Assembly: GCA_024679065.1 (NCBI GenBank) | Contig: JAGIQG010000016.1 | Coordinates: 5,467,976-5,520,000 of the forward strand | Length of the DNA stretch: 52,025 nucleotides | Direction of reading: 5' to 3' | Origin: Sphyrna mokarran | Lineage: Eukaryota | In this document: positions 16,401 to 51,804 of the stretch, one piece after another | How positions within the stretch are numbered: the stretch's first letter is position 1 | How the letters are laid out: each line of letters opens with the position of its first letter | Position numbers and translations under genes: made by a program | The notes under the pieces: model-generated | Seen by the model: only the letters and a program-made list of their open reading frames with translations | What the model was told of the DNA's origin: nothing | Database searches by the model: none

Positions 16401-19400
16401 ACAGCGGGGATTTATTGGATATCTCTATAGTGTTAATTATTTGTATGTTCACCTTATGCTACTGACATAGGACGCGAAATCATCATCCTCAGTGTGGTAG
16501 TGGCGGTGTTGCTGGTTATTCTTGCCACGATTCTCATCGTCTTCCTCATCAGGAGAAAACGTAAAGCAGTAGGTAAGTTCTCAGGGAATGAAAGGTGAAA
16601 TTAGACACCTGCACAGGTATCTCACCTGGACACAGGTATTCAATACTTCCGCCGTATCATCTTCCAACCTTCTGAGGTTACTGTCCACTCTGATCTCAAT
16701 TTTCTCCCAAAGAGTTGTTCCCTTTCATCATCTCCAATCCTGGGAATAGTCCATTGTCCAAGAATTTACGGAAGAACATAAGGACTAGGAGCAGAAGTAG
16801 GCCTCTGGCCCCCTCGAGCCTGCCCCGCCATTCAATAAGACCATGGCTGGTCTTTTTGTGGACTCGGCTCCACTTACCCGCCTGCTCACCATAACCCTTC
16901 ATTCCTTGACTTGTTCAAAAATGTATCTACCCTTGCCTTAAAAACATTCAAAGAGGTAGCCCCGACTGGGCAGAGAATTCCACAGATTCACAACCCTTTG
17001 CGTGAAGAAATTCGTCCTCAACTCAGTCCAAAATCTGCTCCCCTTTATTTTGTGGCCAATGCCCCCTAATTCGAGTTTCACCCACCAGTGGAAACAACTT
17101 CCCTGCTTCTATCTTGTCTATTCCCTTCATAATCTTATGTATTTCTATAAGGTCCTCAGGTTCTATCCCCATACCCCCATGCATTTACTCCAGCTAGCAC
17201 TCTTGACACTAAGGGATAATTTAGCATGGCAAATCCACCCAACCCACACATCTTTGGACTATGGGACGAGCACCCAGAGGAAACCCCCCTTAGACATGGT
17301 GAGAAGGTGCAAACTGCACACGCACGGTGACCCAAGCCAGGCATTGAACCCGGCTCCCTGGCACTGTGAGACATCCGTGCTAACCAACTGTGCCACTCAT
17401 CTTATGTGCCTTTACATCTCCCACTTCTACCTTTCACCAAATTCCTTTTCATCCTGTAATCTCTCAAATCACTTTAAGATTGTTGCATCCGCTGGCTACA
17501 TGTCCCTAAGTTCTGACGAAAGCAGTATCACCTGAAACATTTACTCCGTTTCTCTCTCCATCTCAGCTACCTGGTCTGTTGAGAATTCCTGGCATTTTCA
17601 GTTTATTAATTTCAGATTTCTGCCATTCCTGTGCTCTCCGTTAGAATCGGGGAGCTGGTTTACACCAGTGTCTTCCTTCAGCAAGGAGAGAAGCAAACTC
17701 GAATATATAATGACACAAATCTCCCATTTCATTCATTCAACAGGATCCTACGTCAACAGTTCATTCCTAAGGAAGAGAATCGAGCAGGTAATTGAACGCG
17801 CTGTGATTATTTGCATCATTTCAGCTTCCTACCAAACATTTCAGCCACACAATTGCGGGTCTGCGCCAAGTTGCACCCAAGAGATAGAAATTGCTGTTAG
17901 GGTTTAACTTCATCTGCTTCACGCTTTGGTGACAATGTTCATCAAGTTAGTGGTGTGGAAATCTGCAAAGATACTCTCCAATATCTCTGGGATATCGTTC
18001 TACCAAAAACTATTGATCCATCGGAGAAGGGCAAAGCTTTTCACCAAATATCATCAATACGAATTTAAGATCATTTGTCACAGATTCCCAGGGAATATTT
18101 TTTGCGTGTCACATTGTTTAGAGCTGGAAGTGTTCGCTGGAAAGGCGCTGGAAGCAAATTCCTGAGTAAATAAGAAGCATTGAAATGATCACTAGAAACA
18201 CGAAAGAATCCAAGCCTAGGGACCGAGAGCTATCACGTGTTGTGAGAATTGATTGATGTTCAATGATTACAGACCAACATGGGATGGGAATGGATAAGTG
18301 CTTGACGGGTGGCAGAGATACGATGGGCCGAAAGGCCTCTTTCATTGCTGTGAAGAACCATACCTGTGACCAATAGTTCAGAAGGAAGAGTGAGCAGAGT
18401 TATTTAGAAATAGCAGGGCAGTGAAACTAATTGGGGAGCTCTATCAAAGATCCTACAATCATGAGTTGCAGAATATACTTCAGAACAGCATGACTTTGTG
18501 ATTCTATGAATTATTCCCATTTACTGTTTGCCGTGCAGAGAAGCTGTGATCTCTTGGTTCATTGATTACACTGAGTTTCCCCCTCTTTCCCCCAGTTTAC
18601 ATCCACGCCTTGTGCCTTCTTGTTTACTCATTCATGGGACACGGGCATCACTGGCTGGGCACCATTTATTGCCCATCCCTAGTTGCCCCAGGGCAGTTGT
18701 GAGTCAACTACATTGCTGTCAATCTGGAGTCACACGTAGGACAGGCCTGATAAGAATAGTTGATTCACTTCCCTGGAGGACATTAGTGAACCAGATGGGA
18801 TTTTCCAGCAATCGGCAATGACTTCATGGTCATCAATAGATTCTTAATTCCAGATATTTTTTATTGAATTCAAATTACACCATCTGCTGTGGTGGGATTC
18901 GAACGTGACCCCAGAACGTTAGCTGAGTTTCTGGATTAATAGTCGAGCAATAATAACCATGAGTCCATCGCCTTGCCTTTCCCTTCCTGTCCAAGATAAC
19001 TTCTGACTGTCCTACCTTGAACTGTATCCAATTTCTGTTCCAGGATTCACCCGAGATGCCTGAAACATACATGGTAAGTGAAACATGGATATATTTTAAA
19101 TGAAACTTTATTTTGTTGAATCAACATGACTGGTTTACTAAAAATTACATGTGTGACACTTTCCCACAGAGTCTGAATTTAGGGGAACAATCGCTATACA
19201 GTGAATTACACAGGTACACCTCGTTCTATATCAATTCTCAGCCAATCCAGCCTCATCAGGTATATTTGTTTTCTTTCTGTCTCGGCACCTGTCTCGCTGT
19301 CTGTCTGTCAGTTTATCACTCTGACCTTCTGTTAGACTGTCTGTGACACAGTCAGTCAGTCCATCTGTCAATCAGTCTGTCAATAGTCTGTCTGCCTGTG

Positions 19401-20581
19401 TGGCTGTCTGTCAGACTGTCAGTTTCTCTGTCAGTCTGTCTATCTGTCAGCGTATCAGTCTGTCTATCTGTCTGTCTGTATGGCTGCCTGTCAGACTGTC
19501 TGCTTCTCTGTTAGTCTGTCTATCTGTCAGCGTATCAGTCTGTCAGTCAGTCTGCCTGTATGACTGTCTGTCAGACTGTCTGCTTCTCTGTTAGTCTGTC
19601 TATCTGTCAGCGTATCAGTCTGTCAGTCAGTCTGCCTGTATGACTGTCTGTCAGACTGTCTATTTCTCTGTCAGTCTGTCTATCTGCCAGCGTATCAGTC
19701 TGTCTGCCTGTATGGCTGTCTGTCAGACTGTCTGCTTCTCTGTTAGTCTGTCTATCTGTCAGCGTATCAGTCTGTCAGCCAGTCTGCCTGTACGACTGTC
19801 AGTCAGACTGTCTGCTTCTCTGTCAGCCTGTCTATCTGTCAGCGTATCAGTCTGTCAATCAGTCTGCCTGTCTTGGCAGTCTTATTGCCCAAGTCTCTGT
19901 CAGTAAAACTGACTGCCAGTCTGACAGTCTGTAAATGTATCAGCCTGTCTGTCAGTCTGACTGTGGGTGGCATGGTGACCCAGTGATTAGCATTGCTGCC
20001 TCACAGCGCCAGAGACCTGGTTTCAATTCCCGGCTTGGGTCACTGTCTGGATGAAGTCTGCACATTCTCCTCGTGTCTGCGTGGGTTTCCTCCAGGAGCT
20101 CCGGTTTCCTCCCACAGTCCAAAGATGTGCGGGTTAGGATGATTGGCAATGCTAAAGTGGCCCTTAGTGTCAGGGAGACTAACTCGGTTAATTGGGTTAT
20201 AGGGATAGGACCTGGATGGGATTGTGGATATTGCAGATTCAATGAACCAAATGGCCTCCTTCTGCACTGTAGGGTTCTATGATTCTATAATTCTAATCTG
20301 TCTGTTAACTAACCAGTTTATTTACACCAGTCAGTCTGTCATTCTGACCGCCAGTCTGCCTGTCAATACGAATGTCAGTCAGTAAGATATCTACCTGTCT
20401 CTATAACTAAGTCTCTCTAACATTCTCCTTCTCCTGAGGTTTTCCATTATCAATAAATATTAGACTCTTCTCTTTTACTTTATAAATACTGCTCCCAGAC
20501 ATCTAACATTCATTTATTTTTTTCAGACAAGGTGAACGCAGCACAAGAAAAAACACCGTTCATCCAGACCTGGGACAGTGA
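4063..20581 (+). CDS. Nectin/PVR(CD155)-like type I Ig receptor with cytoplasmic ITAM (receptor A); join(4063-4404,7530-7823,12231-12333,15440-15579,16471-16572,17744-17787,19044-19073,19170-19213,20527-20581), 5'-partial
   Basis: Nine exons with AG/GT ends and consistent phases (1,1,1,2,1,1,0,0,2) give about 384 aa without the leader: V-set, two C-type Ig domains, hydrophobic TM, RRKRK stop-transfer, and tail GSYVNSSFLRKRIEQ-DSPEMPETYM-SLNLGEQSLYSELHR-QGERSTRKNTVHPDLGQ*. The signal-peptide exon was not found (gap 3565-3916 or upstream). The last exon is less certain. Confidence 0.88.
5120..5500 (-). mobile_element. HE1-like V-SINE
   Basis: Reverse-complement V core and tRNA-like head. Confidence 0.82.
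5785..5995 (+). mobile_element. Rex1/Babar-like LINE fragment
   Basis: AQSIGQTGLPPVDSVHTSRSLGKAASITKDPLHP. Confidence 0.7.
6170..7050 (-). mobile_element. Degenerate CR1 endonuclease-region fragments
   Basis: ORF 6229-6465 contains DLVMCNEAGFINSLRVKGPRGKSDHNVEEF (APE-type SDH motif). Confidence 0.6.
7530..7823 (+). CDS. Receptor A exon: second Ig domain (nectin D2, C1/C2-set)
   Basis: Acceptor tcccccaag|, donor ctct|gtaagt, phase 1-1. Encodes VKPNN...VPVAKCVSAEGNPPAGIRW...GTTTVTSLYKMVPTRSTNGQEVTCVVSHP, typical of nectin D2 (AxCxSxxGxPPAxIxW, GTxTVxS, TCxVxH). Confidence 0.95.
7845..9620 (+). mobile_element. CR1-clade LINE ORF2 (RT) fragment, frameshifted, starting ~20 nt after the D2 exon donor
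   Basis: GNYRLVSLTSVVGKMLE, VDVVYLDLQKAFDKV, VPQGSVLG and RPHLENCVQFWSP across ORFs 8204-9271, followed by a CR1 tail. Confidence 0.95.
10595..11220 (+). mobile_element. CR1-clade LINE 3' end (young, intact C-terminal ORF)
   Basis: ORF 10656-11129 LYKTLVRPHLEYCVQFWSP...FFTQRVV, with a (gttctat)n tail. Confidence 0.93.
11310..12110. mobile_element. Cluster of three V-SINE pieces (two minus, one plus)
   Basis: V cores at ~11490-11550 and ~11700-11850 (minus) and ~11930-12110 (plus). Confidence 0.75.
12231..12333 (+). CDS. Receptor A exon: third Ig domain, N-terminal half
   Basis: Acceptor tttcccccatag|, donor gg|gtaaat. Encodes YPPIVTITHEHGSRSINLKCVAEANPPATTYSWQ (YPP...LxCxAxANPP..Y.W). Not in the ORF track. 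Confidence 0.92.
14530..15125 (-). mobile_element. Rex1/Babar-like LINE 3' fragment
   Basis: KKAHQCRYFVRR...LTNFYRYTTESILPAWITAWYG and KKLQRVL..AQSIT...ASIIKDPTHP..F.LFP.G, with an (aaatc)-type tail. Confidence 0.8.
15440..15579 (+). CDS. Receptor A exon: third Ig domain, C-terminal half
   Basis: Acceptor ggtttttccaag|, donor gaag|gtattt, phase 2-1. Encodes (G)LPEEVETNTSQAFVKIRMKGNVSCFATNSIGTGNNTIEIIFEGSSE (CxAxNxxG motif). Confidence 0.9.
15888..16150. mobile_element. Palindromic element made of two inverted Penelope-like 3' ends
   Basis: agtctcacaacaccaggttaaagtccaac...gttggacttgaacccagtgttgtgagact forms long inverted arms, each with a degenerate ctgatga..gaaa motif. Confidence 0.7.
16471..16572 (+). 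CDS. Receptor A exon: transmembrane segment
   Basis: Acceptor ctgacatag|, donor gtag|gtaagt. Encodes (G)REIIILSVVVAVLLVILATILIVFLIRRKRKAV. Confidence 0.93.
16775..17150 (-). mobile_element. CR1 LINE 3' end
   Basis: Reverse-complement match to the 3' region at 9290-9620. Confidence 0.85.
17165..17400 (-). mobile_element. HE1-like V-SINE
   Basis: gtgctaaccaactgtgccac head end and V core. Confidence 0.78.
17744..17787 (+). CDS. Receptor A cytoplasmic exon 1 (44 nt, YVN motif)
   Basis: ttcattcaacag| GSYVNSSFLRKRIEQ |gtaatt. Same length, phase and GSYVN start as the paralog exon at 47628-47671. Confidence 0.88.
19044..19073 (+). CDS. Receptor A cytoplasmic exon 2 (30 nt, first ITAM tyrosine)
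   Basis: tttctgttccag| DSPEMPETYM |gtaagt, phase 0-0. Confidence 0.9.
19170..19213 (+). CDS. Receptor A cytoplasmic exon 3 (44 nt, rest of ITAM)
   Basis: ctttcccacag| SLNLGEQSLYSELH(R) |gtacac, after a 96-nt intron. The paralog exon reads SLNLNEQSMYRQLH(R). Confidence 0.88.
19300..19960. repeat. GTCT/CTGT-derived minisatellite with ~80-bp higher-order unit
   Basis: Near-identical units start at ~19484, 19564 and 19644. Confidence 0.9.
19965..20290 (+). mobile_element. HE1-like V-SINE, full length
   Basis: A-box/B-box-like head, V core, tail ctgcactgtagggttctatgattcta. Confidence 0.88.
20527..20581 (+). CDS. Receptor A probable terminal coding exon
   Basis: Branch-like ctaac plus T-tract tttcag|. 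In phase 2 it reads (R)QGERSTRKNTVHPDLGQ*. AATAAA at 21543-21548 is a candidate poly(A) signal. Confidence 0.55.
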
Positions 20582-30800: not shown

Positions 30801-32206
30801 AAACCAAATCAAGTCCAAAAATCCATCTATAAACATAGACAGGGACCATGGGTAGAGGTGGGAACATCGGGGTGGCGGAGCAGGCTCGTTGGGCCGAAGG
30901 GCCGTGCTGTTTTGTTCTTTGTTCTTTGTTCAAATCAATTCAAATCAAATCAAGAATCCAGCTAGATTCTTTGCCTTTATTGATAATACAGCAGCATTGA
31001 TAATTGTTATTTCTGTATCATTACTGAAATTCTCTCGTTCCTGTGTGCTCTGCGAAGAGATAATGAGACCTGACCTTATCTTTTCCAAACCACTGCAGAA
31101 CCAGTCTTTAAATGTGCGTTTCTATATTTGACGCAAATAGAAGTGAACAATAGATATTGTAACTCGTTACTCCTCCACGCGGTCACATCGTAGTAACGTT
31201 GGTGCATCATCACGTTCCACACTTAGCAGTTTCCGATCTCAATTATTTTCTTTTTCCACCCCCCCCCCCCCCCCCCCCCCCCCGTCCCCCCGCAGCGAAC
31301 TTAGTGACGATCGTGATCCTGTCTCGAGGGAAGTGTGGCATCAGTCAAGGTGTTTCTCTCTACCTGGTCTCCATGGCAACGGCAGACCTAATGGTGGTTT
31401 TCTTCTCCCTCATACTCAGCTCACTCAGTTTCCGCTACGTCCCCTTCTCGTTCCTGTTCTACACGGCGGTGTGCAGCAGCATCAGGGTGCTGGGCTACGC
31501 CGCTATCGACTGTTCCATCTGGCTCACCATCGCTTTCACCGTCGACCGTTACGTGGCCATTTGCTGCCACAATCTGAAGGCCAAATACTGCACCCAGAAG
31601 GCAGCGGTGGTGGTGGTCACCACTGTCTCCCTGGTGAGCGTTCTGAGGAACGTCCCTTTTTACTTCAAGTTCCAGCCTTACGGCATATACTACGGTGTGC
31701 CCTGGGGCTGCGACACCAGGCTGGAGTTTTTTACCTTGCCAGGATGGCTGGCATTCTTCTGGCTCCACCACCTTCTGAACCCATTGATCCCCTACCTGCT
31801 GATCCTGTTGTTCAACGCTCTGACCGTCAGGCACATTGTGCTGGCCAATCGTGCCCGCAGGGGTCTCCGGGCTCCCGGTAAAGGGGGGCAGACGGAAGAC
31901 GCAGAGGTGGCCAACAGGCGGAGGTCCATCATGCTCTTGTTTGTTGTGTCGGGCAGTTTTATACTGCTTTGGATGACCAAGATAGTCATTTTCATACTGA
32001 TGGAGATCTCTAACAGCCATGTTTACTTGAGTTACAACGACCCGGTTATCATCGCGGATTACACCGGCACCATGCTGTTCTACCTGAGCTGCTGCACTAA
32101 CACTGCTGTTTATGCGCTGACCCAGAGTAAAGTCAGAGAGCAACTGAAGAGGGCGGTGAAATATCCCTTCATCCTCATCACTGAACAAGTATCTTCACTA
32201 AAGTAA
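27748..32206 (+). CDS. GPR139/GPR142-like class A (rhodopsin-family) orphan GPCR, two exons join(27748-27817,31296-32206), 326 aa
   Basis: Exon 1 MAVAIILRVINVFYHLLVVISIP g|gtaagg joins in phase 1 to cgcag|cg NLVTIVILSRGKCG...YLVSMATADL...IWLTIAFTVDRYVAIC...NVPFY...PLIPYLLILLFNALTV...RRRSIMLLFVVSGSFILLW...SCCTNTAVYALTQSKVREQL. It has seven hydrophobic segments and an open frame to taa at 32204-32206. Confidence 0.92.
27925..28240 (+). mobile_element. HE1-like V-SINE (in GPCR intron)
   Basis: V core and CR1-type tail. Further copies at ~28515-28700 and ~30100-30390. Confidence 0.78.
29005..29440 (+). mobile_element. Rex1/Babar-like LINE fragment
   Basis: Remnants resembling FLGVHIT..LSW...LYFLRRLRKF and ASIIK. 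Confidence 0.7.
29487..30020 (-). mobile_element. CR1 LINE 3' end (in GPCR intron)
   Basis: ORF 29579-30013 LEGVQRRVTRLIP...FFTQRVVNLWNSLP. Confidence 0.92.
30443..30820 (+). repeat. (CAAAT)n-derived compound microsatellite, expanded tail of a Rex1-like 3' end
   Basis: aaatc/aagtc/aagcc variants with higher-order repetition, following aataataaatc. Confidence 0.9.
31296..32206 (+). CDS. GPCR exon 2 (TM1 end to C-terminus)
   Basis: Main part of ORF 31199-32206. The poly-C run before the acceptor is intronic. DRY motif present. Confidence 0.95.
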
Positions 32207-38209: not shown

Positions 38210-38930
38210 AGAATATAGGGCTAATGGTAGGACTCTTAGTAGTGTAGATGAGCAGAGAGATCTCGGTGTACAGGTGCATAGATCCCTGAAAGTTGGTACT
38301 CAAGTTGATAAGGTTATTAAGAAGGCATACAGTGTGTTAGCTTTTATTGATAGAGGGATTGAATTTCGGAGCCGAGACGTCATGTTGCAACTATACAAAA
38401 CTCTGGTGCACTTGGAGTATTGTGTATAGTTCTGGTCGCCACATTATAAGAAAGATGTGGAGACATTGGAAAGGGTGCAGAGGAGGTTTACCAGGATGTT
38501 GCCTGGTATGATGGGTAGGTCTTATGAGGAAAGGCTAAGGGACTTGAGATTATTTTCATTAGAGAGAAGAAGGCTAAGAGGTGACTTAATTGAGACATAT
38601 AAGATAATCAGAGGATTAGACAGGGTGGATAGTGAGAGCCTTTTTCCTCGGATGGAGATGGATAACACGAGGGGACATAGCTTTAAATTAAGGAGTGGTA
38701 GTTATTGGGCGGATGAAAGAGGTGGGTTCTTTACTCAGAGGGTAGTAAGGGCATGGAATGCCCTGCCTGCTGCAGTTGTGGACTCGTCAAGTTTAAGGGA
38801 GTTCAACTGGTCAGTGGATAGGCATATGGATAGCATTGGAATAGTTTAGGTTAGAGGCTCGTAAGATTGGTTCCATTGGTCGGCTCAACATCGAGGGCCG
38901 AAGGGCCTATACTGTTCTATATTCTACATT
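38210..38930 (+). mobile_element. CR1 LINE 3' end
   Basis: ORFs 38172-38849 QRDLGVQVHRSLK...LERVQRRFTRMLPG. Same subfamily as 10595-11220. Confidence 0.93.
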
Positions 38931-41870: not shown

Positions 41871-42649
41871 CACCCATCTGACTTTGGAGAGGGTACAGAA
41901 AAGATTTGCCAGAGTGGTACACACTGCTGCTACCGAATCCCCCGCTGTCAATCCCAAGGATGTTGACAGCGGGGGATTCAGTGACGGTAACACCATGGAA
42001 GCAGTTGTTAGAGTGTCTCTTGTTAATTATGGTCAATGCCTGGCACTTGTGTGGCACTTTGCCACTTGTCAGCCAAAGCCCTGGAGACCTGGGACCAATT
42101 TAAATTGTTTATTCTTCACACAACGGATCCCTGGTGCCAACCTCTCACTTTATACAAGCGGGAGGGACCCTGGTTGGTGAGAAATAATTGCCTCGTATTT
42201 TTTCAGCCCTTTGCCTCGGCACCAATCATCTCAAAGCTCTTCACATTCTGTGAAATACGTGGTGACAGATGGTCCCCACTGCGATGCAGGAAACCCAGGG
42301 GCCAAAGCGTGCACAGCAAAATCCCATGCATACAACAATGTGATAATGAGACCCCGTTCCGGGGGCAGTGACAGATGTTGGGTTCTTGGAGGGGAGGAAG
42401 AATGTTGCAGCTCTCCTTTGAGATAGTTCTGCCGGATCATTCCCAAGTCTCCAAGCGGAACGGCGATGGAGGTTTAATATCTCTCCCGAGATGTGCCGCC
42501 TCCAAACAGTTTCTTGGGTGCTGAATTGGAGAGTCTGCTTTTACATCTCAAGCCCCGTGCTGAACTCCTAACCCTCTGTTTCCGAGGCAGGCTGGCCACC
42601 CAACTGAGCCACGGCAAACCGGCTTCTCTCTCGCGCTTCCAACGCGCTG

Positions 42650-43155
42650 ACGTCTTGCTGAATTCTGCTCGCCACACTGCCAGAGAGACGTGGAGGCTTT
42701 GGAGAGGGTGCAGAAAAGATTTACCAGGATGTTTGCCTGGTACGGAACTACGAGGAGAGGTTGGAGAAACTTGGCTCATTCTCACAGAGGTCAAGGGGGA
42801 GACCTGATAAATTACAAGGGGAATGGACGGAGTCAGAAGCTTTTTCCCCAGGGTGGAAGAGTCAATTACTAGGGGGCATAGGTCCAACATGCGAGGGGCA
42901 AGGTTTAAAGGAGATGTACAGGGCAAAGTTTTCTACAAAGAGGCTGGTGGGTGCCTGGAATTCACACCCGGCGGAGATAGTGAAGCAGACACAGTAGTGA
43001 CATTTAAGGGGTGTCTTGATAAATACACAAATGGGATGGGAATAGAGGGATATGGTCCCAGGAAGGGTGGGGGGTTTTAGTTAAGTCAGACAGCATGATC
43101 GGTACAGACTTGGAGGGCCGAAGGGCCTGTTCCTGTGCTGTAATTTGCTTTGTTC
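42650..43155 (+). mobile_element. CR1 LINE 3' end, degenerate
   Basis: ALERVQKRFTRMF, with tail gggccgaagggcctgttcctgtgctg. Confidence 0.85.
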
Positions 43156-43264
43156 TCTGAATCCATATTCACTGAACATTGATACGGTTTGCGTTGCAAC
43201 GATTCTAACATAAATACTCTTTTTGTTAGCACAGAATTTCAATATTAATGAGAAATAGACACCA

Positions 43265-43405
43265 CAGGGGGGGGGGCTTTTCCCTTCCCACCCTCCACAG
43301 GAATCGTAGCGGTGGGGGGATCAGGGAAGGGGGGTGCAGAGTCCGTGCAAAGTTCCATTGACCTCGGGCAGGATTTTAGTGTGAGGTCGGAAAATCCCAC
43401 CCTTT
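43265..43405. mobile_element. MITE-like ~140-bp element; related copies at ~24357-24488, 37090-37218 and 46697-46858
   Basis: Imperfect terminal inverted repeats (ggg..ttttcc / ggaaaa..ccc) and shared internal ccattgacctc.gg..ggatttt. Confidence 0.5.
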
Positions 43406-43735
43406 CCATCAAAAATTTTCACCTTCCGCTCATCAGGATAGCGGGAAAGGAATTATCGGCTGCAAACAACAATTCGTACTGCTTGGGAAGAGAGTGCTGA
43501 TCGGTGGCGTCTGATTGGTGGAAAACGTCGCCATGGAGAATGCAGCGTGGACCAGTTAACTTCCAAGCGCTTTGTCAAACTGGGCGGGTCCACTCTGATT
43601 GGTCAAGATACGGACCCTGAGGAACGAATCAGCGAATGGCTGACCTGTTGATGTAAAAAAAGACTCAAAGTTTGGGAGTTGAAGAGAAAGACAGAGAGAA
43701 AAGGACTCGGCCGACTGTGTCCCCACCCCCACCCG

Positions 43736-43950
43736 TTTATTCCACCGTGTTCAATCTATCCCCAGTGTCAGAGGGTGCGTCACTCCGCACACAACATGTG
43801 ACTGTCCGTGGGGAAAATCATCCAGGGAGAATTGTTCCCGAGTGTGGGTGTTGAGAATCCCGGTCTCTGACACAGACAGAAAGATTCGCAGGATTTTCAC
43901 TCGATCCCAGGATTCAGTGAGTAACGTCACTCTGTTCAGTAAGGTGTTAT
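43736..43950 (-). other. Receptor B probable terminal exon (R-stop, 3' UTR, AATAAA)
   Basis: Minus strand: atgatttctcccctag|a taa completes AGA and stops. AATAAA lies on the minus strand at 43741-43736. Confidence 0.55.
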
Positions 43951-46900
43951 CTAGGGGAGAAATCATTCACTGTGTAAGATTGAGGAACTCTGCAACAATA
44001 ACTTGCATTTATATAGCAGCCTTGATGTTATAAAACAAACCGATGGCCCTTTACAGGGGAAATTATTGAAGAAAACATCAGCCAGAGACACATGAGGGGA
44101 TATAAAAACCAGGGGAACAGACCGCTGGCAAAAAAGGCGTTGATTTTAAGGTGTGAATTAAAGAAGGAGAGATTGTGAGAAAGAGAGATGTGGAGAGGGA
44201 ATTCCAGAACTCAGTACCCTCTCCTCTCCCCAACCCAGGCAGCTGAAGGCTTGGCCACCAGTGGTGGAGCAATGAGAATCAGGGGATACTCAAAAGGCAG
44301 GAATTGGAGGGGCTGGGGCTGGTTAAAAATATAGGGAGGTTTGTAGGGGCTGGAGGAGGTTGCAGAGATAGGGAGGGTGTGTAGGGGCTGGAGGAGGTTA
44401 CAGAGATAGGGACGGTGTGTAGGGGCTGGAGGAGGTTACAGAGATAGGGACGGTGTGTAGGGGCTGGAGGAGGTTACAGAGATAGGGAGGGTTGTAGGGG
44501 CAGGAGGACGTTACAGAGATAGGGAGGGTTGTAGGGGCAGGAGGACGTTACAGAGATAGGGAAGGTTGTAGGGACTGGAGGAGGTTACAGAGATAGGGAG
44601 GGTTGTAGGGACTGGAGGAGGTTACAGAGATAGGGAGGGTTGTAGGGACTGGAGGAGGTTACAGAGATAGGGAAGGATGTAGGGTCTGGAGGAGGTTACA
44701 GAGATAGGGAAGGATGTAGGGACTGGAGGAGGTTACAGAGATAGGGAGGGTTGTAGGGACTGGAGGAGGTTACAGAGATAGGGAGGGTTGTAGGGACTGG
44801 AGGAGGTTACAGAGATAGGGAGGGTTGTAGGGGCTGGAGGAGGTTACAGAGATAGGGAGGGTTGTAGGGGCTGGAGGAGGTTACAGAGATAGGGAGGGTT
44901 GTAGGGGCTGGAGGAGGTTACAGAGATAGGGAGGGTTGTAGGGGCTGGAGGAGGTTACAGAGATAGGGAGGGTTGTAGGGGCTGGAGGAGGTTACAGAGA
45001 TAGGGAGGGTTGTAGGGACTGGAGGAGGTTACAGAGATAGGGAGGGTTGTACCGGCTGGAGGAGGTTACAGAGGTAGGGAGGGTTGTAGGGGTTGGAGGA
45101 AGTTACAGAGATAGGGAGGGTTGTCAGGGCTGAAGGAGGTTACAAAGATAGGGAAGGTTGTAGGGGCTGGAGAAGGTTACAGAGATAGGGAGGATTTTTG
45201 GGGCTGGAGGAGGTTACAGAGATAGGGAGGGGGGTTGTAGGGCCTGGAGGAGGTTACAGAGATAGGGAGGGATGTAGGGGCTGGAGAAAGTTACACTGAT
45301 AGGGAGGGCTGTAGGGGCTGGAGGAGGTTACAGAGATAGGGAGGGTTGTAGGGGCTGGAGGTGTTAACAGAGATAGGGAGGGTTGTAGGAGCTGGAGGAA
45401 GTTATAGAGATAGGGCGAGTTGTCGGGGCTGTAGGAGGTTACAGAGATAGGGAGAGTTGTCGGGGCTGTAGGAGGTTACAGGGATAGGGAGGGTTGTCGG
45501 GGCTACAGGAGGTTATTGAGCTGTGCTCTTGGAGCCAGAACCTCAGAACTGGAAGGTAAGAGGGTTTAACTCTGAGGAAGGGCTGATGGACAAGTTGAGT
45601 GTGGAAGACTAACCCTCTCTGGAGCTGCGAGTCAGTAACATGGGCAGAAACTGCTTTGGATTGTGAGTGGAGAAGGTGAAACGTGTGGAAAGATTATCGA
45701 GAGAGAGAGAGAGAGAGACACGGAGACAGAGTTTGGGCAGAGTCACTCCCTGATGGTGATGTGAATGAGGCTGTAAACACATGGTTGGTGAATAAACCTT
45801 GCCTGTGAAGTTGTCTGTACATCGACTGCTCGTTCAGATTCAGACTCTGCGGGGGGAGGGGGGAGAAGAACACAAAACCAATTTGGGGGTTTCAAACTGT
45901 GATGAATTTGTGTGAAAGAATTCTGTGTTTCTGGGTGGGATACTCACCGTGTAATTAGACTGTGACTCCGGGGAGATCTGCAATACAACGTTAACACGGT
46001 TAGGGGGGACTCAGAGTAAGTTATTCTGTGAGACGTGTAGAGAGTGAGAGCAAAGTGAGCATAAACTGTAATAACAATGTAATTCCCTGATGATTCTATT
46101 TAATATTCCCTCTCTCATTAACCCCCAGAGACAGCGGGTGGGGGGATTGTGTTAATATTTCCCTTCAAGTGAGGGTTGACACATTTTCCTGTAACAGGGA
46201 CAAAGGAAGATTTGATTCTGATAACACTGGTGGGATGTGTTATTGACTGACACAAAGTGATGATCAAACGTGTATCTAAAAAACACTCAAAGCAGAGCTG
46301 AAGTTTCAATTTTATTTGTCGCAAGTCGGTTTATATTAACATTGCAATGAAGTTACTGTGAAAATCCGCTCTCCGGCACCTGTTCGGGTACACCGAGGGA
46401 GCATTTAGCATGGCCAATGCACCCTAACCAGCACGTCTTTCGGACTGTCAAAGGAAACCCGAGGAAACCCACGCAGACACGGGGAGAATGTGCAGACTGC
46501 ACACAGACAGTGACCCAAGCCAGGAATCGAACCCGGGTCCCTCACGCTGTGAGGCAGCAGAGCTAACCCACTGTGCCGTCCCAATTATCACATGCGTTGG
46601 GATACAATGAAAAAGTGTTGTTTCTTGCAGACAAAGCATGCCATTCATAGAGTACACAGGGGGCGAAGGAAAGGTGAAGGTGCAAAGTGCAGTGTTGGGG
46701 CGAGGTTTTCCCACCGCCCTCACCTCAAAATCGGAAAGTTCCCGCCCGCGGTCAACCGACTTTTGCATGGTCTTTCCCCCCCCCCCAACCTCCCTCGCCA
46801 CCCCCCACATTCCCACTCCAATCCCAATGGTGGACGAGACAGGAAAACTACCCCCCCACCTTTGAAATTTAATATGTGATAGGTTCATTCAAGACCAGCT

Positions 46901-49900
46901 TAATATACAAAAAACAAAACAAAACAGCACGGGGAAACAGGCCCTTCAGCCCAACGAGCCCACGCCGCCACCCCGATGTTCCCACCTCTACCCGTGATCC
47001 CTGTCCATGTTTATAGATCTATGGATTAAAAATCAAATTTGAGACAATTTAGGGAGAATTTGTTTTGCCAATTAGCCTAAGAGCACATCTTTGGGATGTG
47101 GGAGGAAACCGGAGCACCCGGAGAAAAACCCACGCAAGCACGGGGAGAATGCGCAAACTCCCACAGACACAGGCCCAAATCCATGTATCTGCACAGCACA
47201 GCGATAGTCACTGAGCTGTCGTGTTGCCCATCAAATGGTCCAGGTCAAGCGTACACTAACGACGTGAAGCACTAGGATACTCTCGAAAAAAATCCAAGAG
47301 CAGCCCTCTCACGACCCATCGCGTGTATGCCTTGACAAGAAGGTGGACCAAAGCACCTGTAGGATAAAAACAAGTACATCAATATTATCATCTATTTACA
47401 CATTTATGTGACGGGACCGTACAAAAATTCACATTGGTCCACATTGACACGCAATGTCTGCTTTCATTGGGAAGCAATCTCAGATCCAAAAGGATGAACA
47501 CATTGCCCGTGCCAAAGGCTATCTGGAAATCAGATACACTGTGCTGATCAAGTTCATGGTTCCATCACACACAGAGGAAGTCCCCAGTCCCACCCCTCCC
47601 AGAGGAGTTGGTCGGAGTTGTGTTTACCTGGTTAGTATGGTGGATTCGCCGAGGAACATTGACGTAGGACCCTGCCGAGAGTAGAAAACAGCAGTGAGTG
47701 TGGCGGAGGTTGACACCGATACTGTTTTTCTGCGCTCGCTGTGTTACCGCGTTTGGACAATGTGCTAACCCAATCGCCCATTATTACTGTACCTCCCAGA
47801 ATGTCCAATAACAATCTTCCCCTTTACAAAACACCGGCTCAGAGTATTGAGATCCCTTCTGGGTATCACAATTCAGGAAGGCTTTGGAACTGATCCAGAA
47901 AAAGATTGACGGGAACGGTTCCAGCATCGACGATCTTCCATGATGTGGATACGTTGGAGAAGTTGGATCTTCTCTGCTTGGGTTGGGCCTGCACTCATTG
48001 GAGTTTAGAACAATGAGAGACCTTATTGAGACATACAGGATGAAATTTCTTGTCCCGTCCTCCACGGGGATTGTAGCGGGCGAGACAGAATATTTGGTGC
48101 ACCATACAAAGCTTCCTTGACCTTAGGCAGAGGACTTGGGGCAGAAAATCCCACCCATTCGATTCTCACGGAGTCTGACAGGGTGACTTCCCTGTGCAAG
48201 AGTCTAGGATCAGACAGCATCATCTTGGAGTAAGGAGTTGCCCATTGAAAACATAGATGAGGAGAAATATCTCTTCTTAGAGGATAATGAACCTGTGGAA
48301 TTCTTTACCGCTGTGGGATTTAGAGACTGGGTCACACGGTATACTTCCCCAAGCACAAACATTCACTCACCCCACCGCCAACGCACAGGGGCAACTGTGT
48401 GTACCATCTACAAGATGCACTGCACAAACTTACTGTTCTCCGGAGCAGAGTTATTTGGAGAGTGGCTGGAGAGAATCCTGACTTGCAATTTCTGTCTTGT
48501 ACTTTATTTTGTAGCGTGTTTATTTCGGCGCTCCGTAGCGGGAGGTAGGCGCGGGGGGCTGCAGGGGAGGAAGCGCGGGAGTATAAAAGGAAGGCCAAGG
48601 TAAGACAGCGGGCAGCGTCGGGAGCGGGCAGTGGAGTGAGACGGGAATTAGAGTGAGAACAACAAGGGCTTAAGCTCACTGGGCTTGGGCGAGCGCAGGC
48701 TAGGACGCAGTGAGTAACGTGCTTCTTACCTAATCACCTTTAAAGGGGTATATAAAATGCCACGATACTTGGCCAAACGCGTCCACTGTGTACGCTGCCA
48801 TATGTGGACCTTCTTGGAGNNNNNNNNNNNNNNNNNNNNNNNNNNNNNNNNNNNNNNNNNNNNNNNNNNNNNNNNNNNNNNNNNNNNNNNNNNNNNNNNN
48901 NNNNNNNNNNNNNNNNNNNTAGGATAAAAGGTAAAACTATAAGGAGCATAGAGACGCAGAGAGACTTGGGGGTGCAGGTTCACAAGTCTCTGAAGGTGTC
49001 CTCACAGGTGGAGAAGGTGACAAAGAAGGCGTATAGTATGTTAGCTTTCATAGAAAAGGGTATAGAATATAAGAGTAGGAGTTTGATGTTGCAGTTGTAT
49101 ACAACTTTGGTTAGGCCTCACTTGGAATACTGCGCCCAGTTCTGGTCTCCGTACTATCGGAAGGATGTGGAGTCCTTGGAGAGAGTGCAGAGGAGGTTTA
49201 CCAGGATGCTGCCTGGTATGGAAGGACTGTCCTATGAGGAACGATTAGATAGACTGGGGTTGTTTTCCCTTGAAAGACGTCGGCTTAGAGGGGATCTCAT
49301 AGAGGTGTATAAGATTATAAGGGGTATAGATAGAGTAAATGGAGGTAAACTTTTTCCACCTTTAGAAATGGATAGGACGAGAGGTCATGGCCATAGGGTG
49401 AGGGGGGCTATGTATAGGACGAATATTAGAGGGCAGTTTTTCACACAAAGGGTAGTGGGGGTGTGGAATGCACTGCCGAGTAAGGTGGTGGGAGCAGGCA
49501 CGCTGGGGCTGTTTAAGGGTCTCTTGGACAGCCACATGAGCGGTATGCAGATAGAGGGATATATTAGGACTGTTTAACTACGGCTTTTTTCCACAGGTAA
49601 TTCGGTCCATAATTTGAGCACGCATTCGGCAGGTGGTGCGGGTACAGCTCTTGGATGTTGATTCATGGGTTGCCTGGTACCTCATGTCGTATATGAGTGC
49701 TTTATGTGGACCACCTGAAGGGCACCATGACAGCTCAGAGACTATCGATGTGGCTGTGCAGACACTTGGAATTGGGCCGGTGTCTGCGGGAGTTTGCGCG
49801 TTCTCCCCGTGGTTGCGTGGGTTTTCTCCGGGCACTCCGGTTTCCTCCCACAACCCAAAAATTCGCTCTTAGGCTGATTGGGTAACAAATTGTCCCTATG

Positions 49901-51804
49901 GTGAAAATTTTCCAAATTAGGATTAATATATATATTATTATATAGGAATATTAAAATAGGATAATGTATTTGGTATTACGGTGGCGCGGGCTCGTTGGGC
50001 CGAAGGGCCTGTTTCCCGTGCTGTGTTGCTTAAAAAAAAACTTACCAAGTCTCCTGAGGCAGTACCTTCCAAACCCACAACCGCTTCCATCTGGAAGGAC
50101 AAAGGGAGCAGATTCCTGGGAATGCCACCACTTGGAGGTTCCCCTCCGAGTCACTCGCCATCCCGACTTGGGAATATATCAATTTTCCTTCATTGGGTCA
50201 AAATCCTGGAATCCGCTCCCTAACAGCACAGTGGGTGCACCTTCACTCAGGGGTTCAAGGAGGCAGCCCGCCACCACCTTCTCAAGGGGCAGTGAGTGAT
50301 GGGCAATAAATGCTGGCCCACATCCCATGAGTGCTCCCACAGCTTGGACATTTGTCTCTGAAAGGACCAGTTCAGACTGAAACCAAACTGAGTCGGATAG
50401 ACAAGATAACAGCTGACACACACATCTCTTCCTCTCTCAATCTTTCTATCCCTCTCTCCCTCCTCCTATCTCCATCTCTCTCTCTCTTTCTCTAGCCCTC
50501 TCTTTCTTTATCTCCCTCCCTCCTCTCTTTCTTTCTCTTTCTCTCTCTCTCCCCTCCCTCTTTATCCCCCTTTCTCTCTTTATCCACTTTGCACTGCTTG
50601 TCTCTCCCCTTCCCTCTTTGTCCTTCTCTCTCTATGTCTCTCTTTGTTTCTCTCTTTTTCCATCTCTCTTTTTCTCTCTCTCTCTCTCTATCTCTATCTC
50701 TCACTCTCATTCTCTTTCTTTCTCCTTCTCTCCATCCCCCTTTCAATATCCCTCTTGCTGTTTCTCTCCCTCTATCACTTTCTCTATCTCGATCTCTATT
50801 CTCCCTCTATCCCTTTCTCTCTCTTTTTCTATCACTTTACTCCTCATTCTTCCTCTCTCTACCTATCCCTCTCTCCCCTTCTCTATCCCTCTCTCTTTCT
50901 CTCTCTCTCTCTCCTCCTCTCTATCACTCTCTTTTTCTCTCTTTCCCTCTGTCCCTCTCCTTTTTCCTCTGTTCCTTTTACACTCTCACACTCTCTCTCT
51001 CTATCAGTCTATCTCTATTGCTACCTCTCTCTCTATCCCTCTCTAACTCTCCACTCTCTCTCTTTCTAGCACTCTCACTCTCTGTCTATCTCTTTCTGCA
51101 TTTCTCTCTACCATCTCTCTCTCTCTATCCCTCTTAATGTCTCGATCTATCACTCTCTCTATCTCTATCTCTCTATCCCTTTCTGTCTCTCCCTCTCTCT
51201 CTCTCTCTCTCTTTTTATATATATATATATATTCCTTTATCCCTCACTCTCCTCCTCCCTCTCTCTATCCCTCTGTCTCTCTCCCTTTATTGCTTTCTTT
51301 CTCTCTCTCACTCTCTCTATGTCTCTCGCACTCTCTCTATCTCTCTGGCCCTCTCTAACTCTCCTTCTCTCTGTCTCTCCCCTCTCTCTCTCTATATAAA
51401 TATCTCTGGCCCTTCTAACTCTCTCTCTCTCTCTCTCTCTATATGTCTAGCCCTCTCTAACTCTCCCTCTCTCTGTCTCTTCCTTCTCTCTCTCTATATA
51501 TATATATATCTAGCCCTCTCTAACCCTCCCTCTCTCTATCTTTCCTCTTTATCTCTCTCTATCTCTCTAGCCCTTTCTAACTCTCCCTCTCTGTATCTCT
51601 CCCCTTTCTCTCTCTCTCTGTCTATCTCTCTATCTCTCTCTCTCTATCACCAGGATATTTACAGGATATTATGAATCTTACCAGGTTGCTGGTATTGGTT
51701 GGGCGTGGGCCTTCTGTAAATGATTATCACTGTAGTTATGAGACAGGAGACCCCGATTAAAGCCAGGATAACACCCACAATGAGAGGAGCCTGGGAAGAA
51801 GATT
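43947..51804 (-). CDS. Paralogous ITAM-bearing receptor B, 5'-partial (ectodomain beyond window); complement join(51682-51804,47628-47671,45948-45977,45803-45846,43947-43950)
   Basis: Minus-strand exons read (E)SSSQAPLIVGVILALIGVSCLITTVIIIYRRPTPNQYQQP | GSYVNVPRRIHHTNQ | ISPESQSNYT | SLNLNEQSMYRQLH | R*. Tail exon sizes (44/30/44) and phases are identical to receptor A. Confidence 0.88.
43975..44325 (-). mobile_element. L2-like LINE 3' end
   Basis: Reverse complement reads like F.Q......WNSL.......LK remnants, with tail gctatataaatgcaagttatt. Confidence 0.6.
44325..45515 (+). repeat. 37-bp G-rich minisatellite (~32 copies) derived from L2 ORF2 sequence
   Basis: Unit gggagggttgtaggggctggaggaggttacagagata. 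The reverse strand reads PPYLCNLLQP. Confidence 0.93.
45803..45846 (-). CDS. Receptor B cytoplasmic exon 3 (SLNLNEQSMYRQLH)
   Basis: Minus strand: ttctccccctccccccgcag|agt ctg aat ... cac ag|gcaagg (GC donor), after a 101-nt intron. Confidence 0.87.
45948..45977 (-). CDS. Receptor B cytoplasmic exon 2 (ISPESQSNYT)
   Basis: Minus strand: ttgtattgcag|...tac acg|gtgagt, 30 nt, phase 0-0. Confidence 0.9.
46300..46580 (-). mobile_element. V-SINE, alternative-tail subfamily
   Basis: Near-consensus V core gcagacacggggagaatgtgcagactgcacacagacagtgacccaagcc. Confidence 0.85.
46910..47320 (-). mobile_element. 5'-truncated copy of the V-core-containing CR1 3' UTR (related copies at ~25391-25665 minus and ~30820-30930 plus)
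   Basis: The reverse complement aligns colinearly with 49640-50030. Confidence 0.75.
47628..47671 (-). CDS. Receptor B cytoplasmic exon 1 (GSYVNV)
   Basis: Minus strand: ttttctactctcggcag|gg tcc tac gtc aat gtt ... aac cag|gtaaac, 44 nt. Confidence 0.9.
48520..50030 (+). mobile_element. Probably near full-length CR1 LINE collapsed across a gap (5' UTR, ORF1 start at 48757, gap, ORF2 end at 49577, long 3' UTR)
   Basis: CpG-rich leader with tataaaagg. ATG 48757 starts MPRYLAKRVHCVRCHMWTFLE (CxxCxMW, like the CR1 ORF1 zinc finger). After the 100-N gap the ORF2 C-terminus is uninterrupted. Terminal motif gggccgaagggcctgtttcccgtgctg. Confidence 0.8.
48820..48919. other. Assembly gap (100 N) inside a CR1 element
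   Basis: Run of N between the ORF1 start and the ORF2 end. Confidence 1.
50425..51648 (+). repeat. ~1.2-kb CT-rich polypyrimidine low-complexity tract
   Basis: Almost entirely C/T, with (CT)n and (TA)n islands. Confidence 0.95.
51682..51804 (-). CDS. Receptor B transmembrane exon
   Basis: Minus strand: cctcttctttcag| ... cct g|gtaaga, 123 nt, phase 1-1. Hydrophobic stretch LIVGVILALIGVSCLITTVIIIY followed by RR. Confidence 0.88.

What the first reader, a model, noticed from the sequence alone, without database searches (positions are those of the whole stretch)
43947..51804. Hidden second paralog on the minus strand with the same YVN plus ITAM micro-exon cassette
Seen: the reverse strand holds a TM exon (51804-51682) and exons of exactly 44, 30 and 44 nt reading GSYVNVPRRIHHTNQ, ISPESQSNYT and SLNLNEQSMYRQLHR. 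Phases match receptor A, and the intra-ITAM intron is similarly short (101 vs 96 nt). The TM and linker residues have diverged heavily, while GSYVN, SPE, Yx|SLNLxEQSxYxxLHR and the exon sizes are kept. Inference: this pattern suggests selection on the signalling motifs, supports the ITAM call, and indicates a multigene family. The two genes are convergent and flank the GPCR.
Basis: partly seen in the sequence, partly recalled or inferred. Interest (0 to 1): 0.85.

Follow-up and report, generated by a model that had tools for sequence, protein, structure and literature searches.

The report
Second shark receptor tail with ITAM
The minus strand really carries the membrane-spanning and signalling end of a second, much diverged copy of a shark nectin-like immune receptor gene, but its outer part lies beyond the window and no RNA data could be read, so whether it is a working gene stays open.

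Summary
Observation confirmed. On the minus strand lie a TM exon (51804-51682, 123 nt) and micro-exons of 44, 30 and 44 nt (47671-47628, 45977-45948, 45846-45803). All have AG acceptors, open frames and the phases of receptor A (16471-19213, plus strand). They encode a YVN (Grb2-type) motif and a canonical ITAM, YTSL-x7-YRQL, split Y-x|x-L. Corrections: the last donor is GC, not GT, and the TM exons share no detectable similarity.

The N gap (48820-48919) lies inside the TM-to-YVN intron next to a LINE fragment. No coding frame crosses it, but the TM-to-tail link does span it.

The same cassette ends annotated "nectin-1-like" proteins of 8 shark species: 9 distinct tails, all on nectin/PVR-like ectodomains. 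They have ITIM+ITSM siblings, so these are paired receptors.

B is the most diverged tail (13-18 of 37 residues shared with others). It keeps 10 of 14 family-conserved columns against 8 of 23 variable ones (p 0.03), and synonymous changes exceed non-synonymous ones (p 0.03).

No B-like tail was found among 188 retrieved proteins.

Best reading (0.58): 3' half of a real paralogous activating receptor gene. Relic: 0.27.

The scan had noted A and neighbouring nectin-like genes on this DNA before.

The parts
51682..51804 (-). B transmembrane exon, 123 nt, phase 1 at both ends, AG acceptor and GT donor; no charged residue in the hydrophobic span
48820..48919 (.). Assembly gap (N) inside the TM-to-YVN intron; no coding frame crosses it; continuity not shown
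48920..49577 (+). LINE 3' (reverse-transcriptase C-terminal) fragment abutting the gap, intronic to B
47628..47671 (-). B micro-exon 1, 44 nt: split Gly codon + SYVNVPRRIHHTNQ (pYxN, Grb2-type motif)
45948..45977 (-). B micro-exon 2, 30 nt: ISPESQSNYT, first half of the ITAM (ends Y-x)
45847..45947 (-). 101-nt phase-0 intron that splits the first YxxL module
45803..45846 (-). B micro-exon 3, 44 nt: SLNLNEQSMYRQLH + 2 nt, second half of the ITAM; followed by a GC donor (45802-45801)
44304..45515 (.). 37-bp tandem repeat array (32.6 copies) in the last intron of the model (or in the 3' UTR if the GC donor is not used)
43947..43989 (-). Candidate last coding exon of B (AG acceptor; completes Arg, then VPQSYTVNDFSPR, stop 43949-43947); inferred only
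43736..43741 (-). Only AATAAA or ATTAAA on the minus strand of 42500-45802, about 206 nt past the candidate stop
16471..20581 (+). Receptor A TM exon and tail for comparison: TM 16471-16572, YVN 17744-17787, ITAM halves 19044-19073 and 19170-19213, last exon 20527-20581
31199..32206 (+). Single-exon rhodopsin-type GPCR ORF (335 aa) between the two convergent receptor genes

Best explanation
The stretch holds the 3' half (TM exon, three signalling micro-exons and probably a short last exon) of a second gene, B. B is an old and strongly diverged paralogue of the neighbouring nectin/PVR-like receptor A.

Inferred mechanism: the product is a type I membrane protein with an uncharged TM segment. 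Its tail signals by itself. Src-family kinases would phosphorylate the YVNV tyrosine, which would then bind the Grb2 SH2 domain as in DNAM-1. They would also phosphorylate the two ITAM tyrosines (YTSL-x7-YRQL), which would recruit a Syk/ZAP-70-type tandem-SH2 kinase. That makes it an activating receptor needing no ITAM adaptor.

Shown here: the exons, their phases and splice sites, the motifs, the family, and the pattern of conservation.

Inferred: that the TM exon and the tail are joined across the gap, that the ectodomain beyond 52025 is nectin-like, that the gene is expressed, and all of the biochemistry.
For: - Exon anatomy is identical to A in sizes (44, 30, 44 nt), phases and the short intra-ITAM intron. 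All frames are open, 5 of 5 acceptors are AG and 3 of 4 donors are GT.
- DNA similarity between the A and B regions is confined to exons, mainly the second ITAM exon (52 nt, 73%); a 16-nt match at the start of the YVN exon is not significant. The rest is SINEs and simple repeats. The copy is therefore old, and what is kept is coding.
- 19 of 38 codons encode the same residue, 7 of these through synonymous differences. pS is 0.63 against pN 0.38, Fisher p 0.026.
- B keeps 10 of 14 columns that are conserved in 9 other tails, but matches the majority in only 8 of 23 variable columns, p 0.033.
- The same cassette ends RefSeq models in Mustelus, Carcharodon, Cetorhinus, Stegostoma, Chiloscyllium, Hemiscyllium, Pristiophorus and Scyliorhinus torazame. 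Every one has V-set and/or C2-set_2 Ig ectodomain hits.
- A's V exon is V-set and its next exon is C2-set_2. The nearest solved structures are nectin-1, nectin-4, nectin-3, CD96, PVR and CD226.
- pYxN in DNAM-1 binds Grb2 (PMC4647266, passages).
- The only poly(A) signal downstream lies about 206 nt after the candidate stop.
Against: - No ectodomain exon can be seen: the 221 nt upstream of the TM exon hold no open frame.
- There is no RNA evidence.
- B is the outlier of the family: 13-18 of 37 residues identical to the others, while A shares 19-28.
- B has lost the conserved QRK and D/E linker residues and most of the basic stop-transfer cluster.
- Its last donor is GC.
- Its TM exon has no detectable similarity to A's.
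- None of the 188 proteins retrieved has a B-like tail, including 4 Mustelus asterias members of the closest annotated species.
- The TM-to-tail link spans an assembly gap.
- The statistical tests rest on 37-38 codons.
Confidence: 0.58

Rival explanations
1. B is a relic: a partial or dead duplicate (TM plus tail only, or a whole gene now silent) whose exons still look intact by luck or because it died recently.
For: It is the most diverged tail of the family and has lost the conserved linker residues. It has a GC donor. No B-like tail was among 188 retrieved proteins. There is no RNA evidence. A long intron holds a LINE and an assembly gap. Nothing lies upstream in the window.
Against: Divergence from A is near saturation at synonymous sites (pS 0.63). 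Even so, four frames, five AG acceptors, the exact exon sizes and every tyrosine-motif residue survive. Conserved columns are kept preferentially (10 of 14 against 8 of 23). The GC donor sits in a strong CAG|GCAAG context, which is what working GC-AG introns usually show (recalled knowledge, from no call). Even read-through leaves the ITAM intact.
Confidence: 0.27
2. B is a working gene, but the YVN+ITAM cassette sits on a different, non-nectin ectodomain (exon shuffling), or on almost no ectodomain so that it acts like an ITAM adaptor.
For: The TM exon is unrelated in sequence to A's. Searches seeded with nectin-like ectodomains found no B-like tail. A 94-aa Carcharodon isoform (P0152) consists of leader, TM and cassette only. 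The symmetric phase-1 TM exon and the phase-compatible micro-exons would allow shuffling.
Against: All 9 distinct cassette tails seen sit on nectin-like Ig domains. B lies at the edge of a cluster of nectin-like genes according to unchecked scan notes. TM segments also differ freely among undoubted family members.
Confidence: 0.12
3. Chance resemblance: unrelated open frames that happen to mimic the cassette.
For: The short patterns alone are common (SY[VI]N 2 observed against 1.47 per shuffle; SPE....Y. 2 against 0.53).
Against: The second ITAM exon pattern occurs 0.0 times per shuffle in 100 shuffles and only in A and B. Order, strand, sizes, phases and splice sites all match. The nucleotide match of that exon has E 4e-4 within the region.
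Confidence: 0.01

Closest known systems
Shark RefSeq models named nectin-1-like, nectin-3-like or tactile-like (for example Stegostoma tigrinum XP_059497373, Carcharodon carcharias XP_041032779, Mustelus asterias XP_078092151)
   Same: They end in the same three-part tail: x-Y-[VI]-N ... Q | x-S-P-E ... Y-x | x-L-N-L-x-E-Q-S-x-Y-x-x-L. The TM segment is uncharged. There are ITIM+ITSM siblings; the Stegostoma pair is 296 of 319 identical over the ectodomain.
   Different: B's tail is the most diverged (13-18 of 37 identical). It lacks the QRK linker. Its ectodomain is unseen. None of these models is B's orthologue by tail.
DNAM-1 (CD226) of the PVR-like receptor group
   Same: It is a nectin/PVR-family receptor whose tail has a conserved D/E-I-Y-V/M-N motif that binds Grb2 through pYxN (PMC4647266, passages). 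A's V exon hits CD226, CD96, PVR and nectins among solved structures.
   Different: DNAM-1 has no ITAM. B has G-S before the tyrosine instead of an acidic residue. Orthology was not tested.
CEACAM paired receptors (CEACAM1 with ITIM/ITSM against ITAM-bearing CEACAM3-like decoys)
   Same: These are paired receptors with near-identical ectodomains and opposite tails. In reptiles the ITAM tails are encoded by three small cytoplasmic exons, with an extra tyrosine motif 17-21 residues before the first ITAM tyrosine (PMC13278318, passages). In B that distance is 21 residues.
   Different: The ectodomain of the shark family is nectin-type (C2-set_2; 0 CEACAM chains among 59 PDB matches). The supplementary figure with the CEACAM intron phases could not be seen.
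Classical ITAM subunits (CD3, FcR-gamma, DAP12, CD79)
   Same: [quoted passage not shown]
   Different: Those are adaptors with a charged TM residue and small ectodomains. B's TM is uncharged and the ITAM sits on the receptor chain itself. B has Q, not D/E/N, at -3 of the first tyrosine. There was no sequence match of a family tail to any solved chain.

Membership tests
Classical ITAM | YxxL/I, 6-8 residue spacer, YxxL/I | tested here: met
   YTSL, 7 residues, YRQL across exons 45977-45948 and 45846-45803
Classical ITAM | [quoted passage not shown] | tested here: met
   The border falls between Y-T and S-L, phase 0, with a 101-nt intron; the rule is as stated in PMC4536121
Classical ITAM | D/E/N at position -3 of the first tyrosine | tested here: not met
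   B reads S-Q-S-N-Y, so Q is at -3. Six of the other 9 tails have N there (…NATY, …NSTY); A, P0181 and P0177 do not
Classical ITAM | Tyrosines phosphorylated and bound by the tandem SH2 domains of Syk/ZAP-70 | not testable with these tools
   Needs biochemistry
Shark nectin-like YxN+ITAM receptors (auto-annotated nectin-1-like) | Three-exon tail cassette with YxN, SPE..Y and LNL.EQS.Y..L | tested here: met
   B keeps 10 of 14 columns conserved in 9 other tails
Shark nectin-like YxN+ITAM receptors (auto-annotated nectin-1-like) | V-set, C2-set_2 and Ig ectodomain of nectin/PVR type | not testable with these tools
   It lies beyond 52025.
Shark nectin-like YxN+ITAM receptors (auto-annotated nectin-1-like) | Transcribed and spliced as modelled | not testable with these tools
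DNAM-1-type ITT-like (Grb2) motif | Y-x-N in the cytoplasmic tail | tested here: met
   S-Y-V-N-V in exon 47671-47628
DNAM-1-type ITT-like (Grb2) motif | Acidic residue before the tyrosine (D/E-I-Y-V/M-N) | tested here: not met
   B and A read G-S-Y-V-N. Most relatives read E-x-Y-[VI]-N; the motif is as given in PMC4647266.
Paired activating/inhibitory receptors | A sibling with a near-identical ectodomain and an ITIM tail | tested here: inconclusive
   Shown for the family (P0155 against P0163, 296 of 319). For B itself the ectodomain is unknown. No ITIM or ITSM exon lies in the window.
CEACAM family | CEACAM-type IgV N domain | tested here: not met
   For A and the relatives: nectin, PVR, CD96 and CD226 hits and 0 CEACAM among 59 PDB matches. 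B's ectodomain is unseen.

The most novel reading that the evidence does not exclude
B is not just one more copy. It would be a deep, separately evolving lineage in which the self-contained YxN+ITAM cassette has been carried by exon shuffling onto a different ectodomain, or onto almost none, giving a shark ITAM signalling chain of a new type. This would show the cassette to be a mobile signalling module. A related bolder point: the ITAM tail and the ITIM+ITSM tail of the family align tyrosine to tyrosine and differ mainly by a 12-15 residue spacer. Activating and inhibitory forms may therefore interconvert by a change of spacer length.
Probability: 0.12. Interest if true: 0.7.

Novelty: new variant of a known kind. 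Interest (0 to 1): 0.5.

Why it matters
Cartilaginous fish are the oldest living jawed vertebrates with adaptive immunity. Their NK-like and co-stimulatory receptors are poorly known.

A nectin/PVR-like family has activating members that carry both a DNAM-1-like Grb2 motif and their own ITAM, paired with ITIM+ITSM siblings. That would be an early, adaptor-free solution to activating and inhibitory pairing in the PVR/DNAM-1/TIGIT axis.

Copy B adds two things. It shows which residues survive near-saturating divergence: the three tyrosine motifs and their spacing, but not the linker. It also shows that the cassette exists in at least two old lineages in one genome.

The four full-text searches found no paper describing such shark receptors. 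The proteins exist only as automatic annotations named nectin-1-like.

Tried and rejected

Search with the tail alone. Residues 316-371 of P0033 found only P0033 itself among 17 candidates. A family tail against all solved chains gave only a ribosomal protein at E 0.35, which is meaningless.

B-like tails. None was found in the 150 listed hits of the V-exon search (728 hits at E up to 0.001), the 17 hits of P0155 or the 33 hits of alignment A1. The re-scan covered 188 proteins. These searches were seeded with nectin-like ectodomains and limited by shared words, so a blank is weak evidence.

Scan notes. None covers the DNA beyond 52025. A look-up past the window end was an argument error.

ITIM or ITSM exons in the window: none.

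Rejected readings:
- CEACAM membership, because the ectodomain is of nectin type.
- An extra exon hidden in the gap. This cannot be excluded, but it is not needed, since the TM and YVN exons fit in phase as in A.

Slips:
- One search used A's 30-nt exon one base too far left. This was corrected. The 60 of 118 identity is superseded by 68 of 118.
- One search stopped on an index error and was repeated.
- The first cassette pattern was too narrow and flagged only P0011. One search repeats the scan.

Supplements are closed. Supplementary Figure 9 of PMC13278318 (CEACAM tail alignment with intron phases) could bear on the CEACAM comparison and was not seen.

Papers:
- Passages found by term search only: PMC4536121, PMC4647266, PMC13278318, PMC5112662, PMC4079198.
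- All others: search listings only.

Recalled, from no call: that working GC-AG introns tend to have strong flanking consensus; which signalling partners bind ITAMs; and that RefSeq XP models are automatic predictions often backed by RNA-seq.
Full report
WHAT IS THERE

- TM exon, 51804-51682, 123 nt. After a 2-nt split codon it reads SSSQAPLIVGVILALIGVSCLITTVIIIYRRPTPNQYQQP and ends with one base of a Gly codon.
- Micro-exon 47671-47628, 44 nt: (G)SYVNVPRRIHHTNQ.
- Micro-exon 45977-45948, 30 nt: ISPESQSNYT.
- Micro-exon 45846-45803, 44 nt: SLNLNEQSMYRQLH plus two bases.

All acceptors are AG. The donors are GT, GT, GT and then GC. The GC donor (CAG|GCAAGG) is a correction to the finding.

Read across the 101-nt phase-0 intron, the last two micro-exons give YTSL, seven residues, then YRQL. 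This is a canonical ITAM, split Y-x|x-L.

The plus-strand receptor A has the same layout:
- TM exon 16471-16572, 102 nt, with the same phases.
- 17744-17787, 44 nt: (G)SYVNSSFLRKRIEQ.
- 19044-19073, 30 nt: DSPEMPETYM.
- 19170-19213, 44 nt: SLNLGEQSLYSELH plus two bases.
- An intra-ITAM intron of 96 nt.

I did not build or search a joined spliced model. Every exon was handled apart.

THE ASSEMBLY GAP, TESTED FIRST

The N run 48820-48919 lies inside the intron between the TM exon and the YVN exon. It is 2762 nt from the first and 1148 nt from the second, so no reading frame of the model crosses it.

On the right side a LINE 3' fragment begins 8 nt after the gap. It is colinear with copies at 10593-11047 and 38223-38767. 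The left flank has no comparable match. Continuity is therefore not demonstrated, and the intron length (4010 nt with the 100 N) is only an estimate.

Three things speak for continuity:
- The TM exon is the only good hydrophobic candidate on that strand above the tail.
- It lies in the right order and orientation.
- It ends in phase 1 with a G that completes the same Gly codon as in A.

An extra exon hidden in the gap cannot be excluded, but none is needed.

MORE THAN CHANCE

The short motifs alone are not rare. SY[VI]N occurs 2 times against 1.47 per shuffle. The pattern of the second ITAM exon, however, occurs only in A and B and 0.0 times per shuffle in 100 shuffles.

In a local blastn of A's tail region against B's region, the only significant gene-specific match is that exon (52 nt, 73%, E 4e-4). 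The start of the YVN exon gives a 16-nt match at E 8.8. Everything else is SINE or simple repeat. The introns no longer align, so the duplication is old and what remains similar is coding.

CONSTRAINT

The three micro-exons are 68 of 118 nt identical. 19 of 38 codons give the same residue, 7 of them through synonymous differences. pS is 0.63 and pN is 0.38, with one-sided Fisher p 0.026.

I compared B with nine other tails: A and eight database proteins. B keeps 10 of the 14 columns that are the same in at least 8 of 9. It matches the majority in only 8 of 23 variable columns, p 0.033.

The residues kept are the tyrosine motifs, their spacing and L-N-L-x-E-Q-S. The residues lost are the linker (Q-R-K, the D/E that opens the 30-nt exon, and the T before the first ITAM tyrosine).

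Against this, B is the outlier of the family. It shares 13-18 of 37 residues with every other tail, whereas A shares 19-28, even with a sawshark. The two TM exons give no alignment at all. The tests rest on fewer than 40 codons and are only suggestive.

THE FAMILY

A's exons are V-set (1.8e-13) and C2-set_2 (1.7e-20), plus a split third Ig domain. Its V exon matches nectin-1 D1 best (2.6e-15), then nectin-4, nectin-3, CD96, PVR and CD226. There is no CEACAM among the 59 matches.

A search of 1.84 billion representatives with A's V exon gave 728 hits at E up to 0.001, of which 150 were listed. Two word-limited searches followed: P0155 gave 17 hits and alignment A1 gave 33 hits. Together these retrieved shark RefSeq or UniRef models named nectin-1-like, nectin-3-like or tactile-like.

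Of the 188 proteins held at the end:
- 15 carry the cassette. These make 9 distinct tails counting the truncated P0004, from Mustelus asterias, Carcharodon, Cetorhinus, Stegostoma, Chiloscyllium punctatum, Hemiscyllium, Pristiophorus and Scyliorhinus torazame.
- 13 end instead in an ITIM followed by an ITSM.

In Stegostoma the ITAM form and the ITIM form are 296 of 319 identical over the ectodomain and then diverge completely. This is the hallmark of paired receptors.

All cassette-bearing models have nectin-type Ig hits. A is closest to Mustelus asterias: 76% in V and 79% in the C2 exon.

None of the retrieved proteins has a B-like tail. Unchecked notes of this scan place further nectin-like genes, one with an ITIM/ITSM tail, 10 and 75 kb before the window.

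THE 3' END OF B

If the GC donor is used, a candidate last exon (43989-43947, AG acceptor) completes an Arg codon, adds 13 residues and stops. The only AATAAA or ATTAAA on that strand in 42500-45802 lies about 206 nt further on, at 43741-43736.

If the donor is not used, the frame runs on for 36 codons. In both cases the ITAM is complete.

Relatives also end a few residues after the ITAM, with varied sequences.

HOW IT MOST LIKELY WORKS

Shown: an uncharged TM segment followed by a tail with pYxN and an ITAM.

From the literature:
- The conserved D/E-I-Y-V/M-N of DNAM-1, a PVR-family receptor, binds Grb2 through pYxN and is needed for NK activation (PMC4647266, passages).
- In reptile CEACAMs, ITAM tails are built from three small exons and have an extra tyrosine motif 17-21 residues before the ITAM (PMC13278318, passages). 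In B the distance is 21.

Inferred: B, like A, is an activating receptor chain. It would signal in cis through Grb2 and a Syk-family kinase without an adaptor. It would be the counterpart of ITIM/ITSM siblings.

Membership in the classical ITAM class fails one minor feature: Q, not D/E/N, at -3. The DNAM-1 motif lacks the acidic residue.

WHAT COULD NOT BE DONE

- B's ectodomain lies outside the window. The 221 nt above the TM exon hold no frame.
- Only one run held any of the stretch.
I worked beside it afterwards.
- Four full-text searches found no paper on shark nectin-like receptors with an ITAM. The library is partial, and supplements were closed.

VERDICT

It is only modestly supported on selection. 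It is untested on the central word "paralog", in the sense of a whole working gene.

I put 0.58 on a real paralogous activating receptor gene of the nectin-like family, 0.27 on a relic, 0.12 on a working gene with another or no ectodomain, and about 0.01 on chance.

The shark family (nectin-like ectodomain, cis ITAM plus DNAM-1-like motif, ITIM/ITSM partners) is a new variant of known kinds and worth a specialist's look. B by itself is a useful but incomplete member. Interest 0.5.

Noticed in passing
alignment A1 of database proteins, columns 380-449: The ITAM tails and the ITIM+ITSM tails of the shark family align tyrosine to tyrosine (T-Y-x-S-L-[ND]-L ... V-Y-x-[DE]-[LIV]-K). They differ mainly by a 12-15 residue insert between the two tyrosines. 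The activating and inhibitory tails may therefore derive from one another by a change of spacer length.
   Followed up: partly
window 31199-32206 (+): Single-exon rhodopsin-type GPCR ORF of 335 aa between the two convergent receptor genes. Pfam 7tm_1 5.3e-20; the best solved relative is GPR139 at 4.3e-10. It has a proline run near the N-terminus.
   Followed up: partly
window 45802-45790 (-) against 20527-20539 (+): The bases just after B's last micro-exon (the GC donor region) and the start of A's last exon share CAAGGT at the same offset. Both read R-Q-G after the ITAM. This may be chance, or a hint that B once had or lost the last intron.
   Followed up: no
window 44304-45515: A 37-bp tandem repeat, 32.6 copies, 91% matches, lies downstream of B's ITAM exons. 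An 80-bp-period GTCT-rich array lies at the equivalent place downstream of A's ITAM exons (19328-19871).
   Followed up: no
database proteins P0152 and P0156: Carcharodon isoform X4 (94 aa) is leader plus TM plus cassette with no Ig domain. Stegostoma isoform X3 skips the TM exon in frame, which fits a symmetric phase-1 TM exon as in A and B.
   Followed up: no
database protein P0177, Scyliorhinus torazame: This cassette has lost the tyrosine of the YxN motif (T-Q-A-N-V) but keeps the ITAM. The Grb2-type motif is therefore dispensable in at least one member.
   Followed up: no
window 50432-51645: A 1.2-kb purine-rich (GA on the minus strand) simple repeat fills the start of B's TM-to-YVN intron.
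   Followed up: no
database protein P0065: A 576-aa Ig-domain hit of the V-exon search ends in a different ITAM-like motif (YEPL, seven residues, YDKL). It is not the cassette. Its species was not looked up.
   Followed up: no
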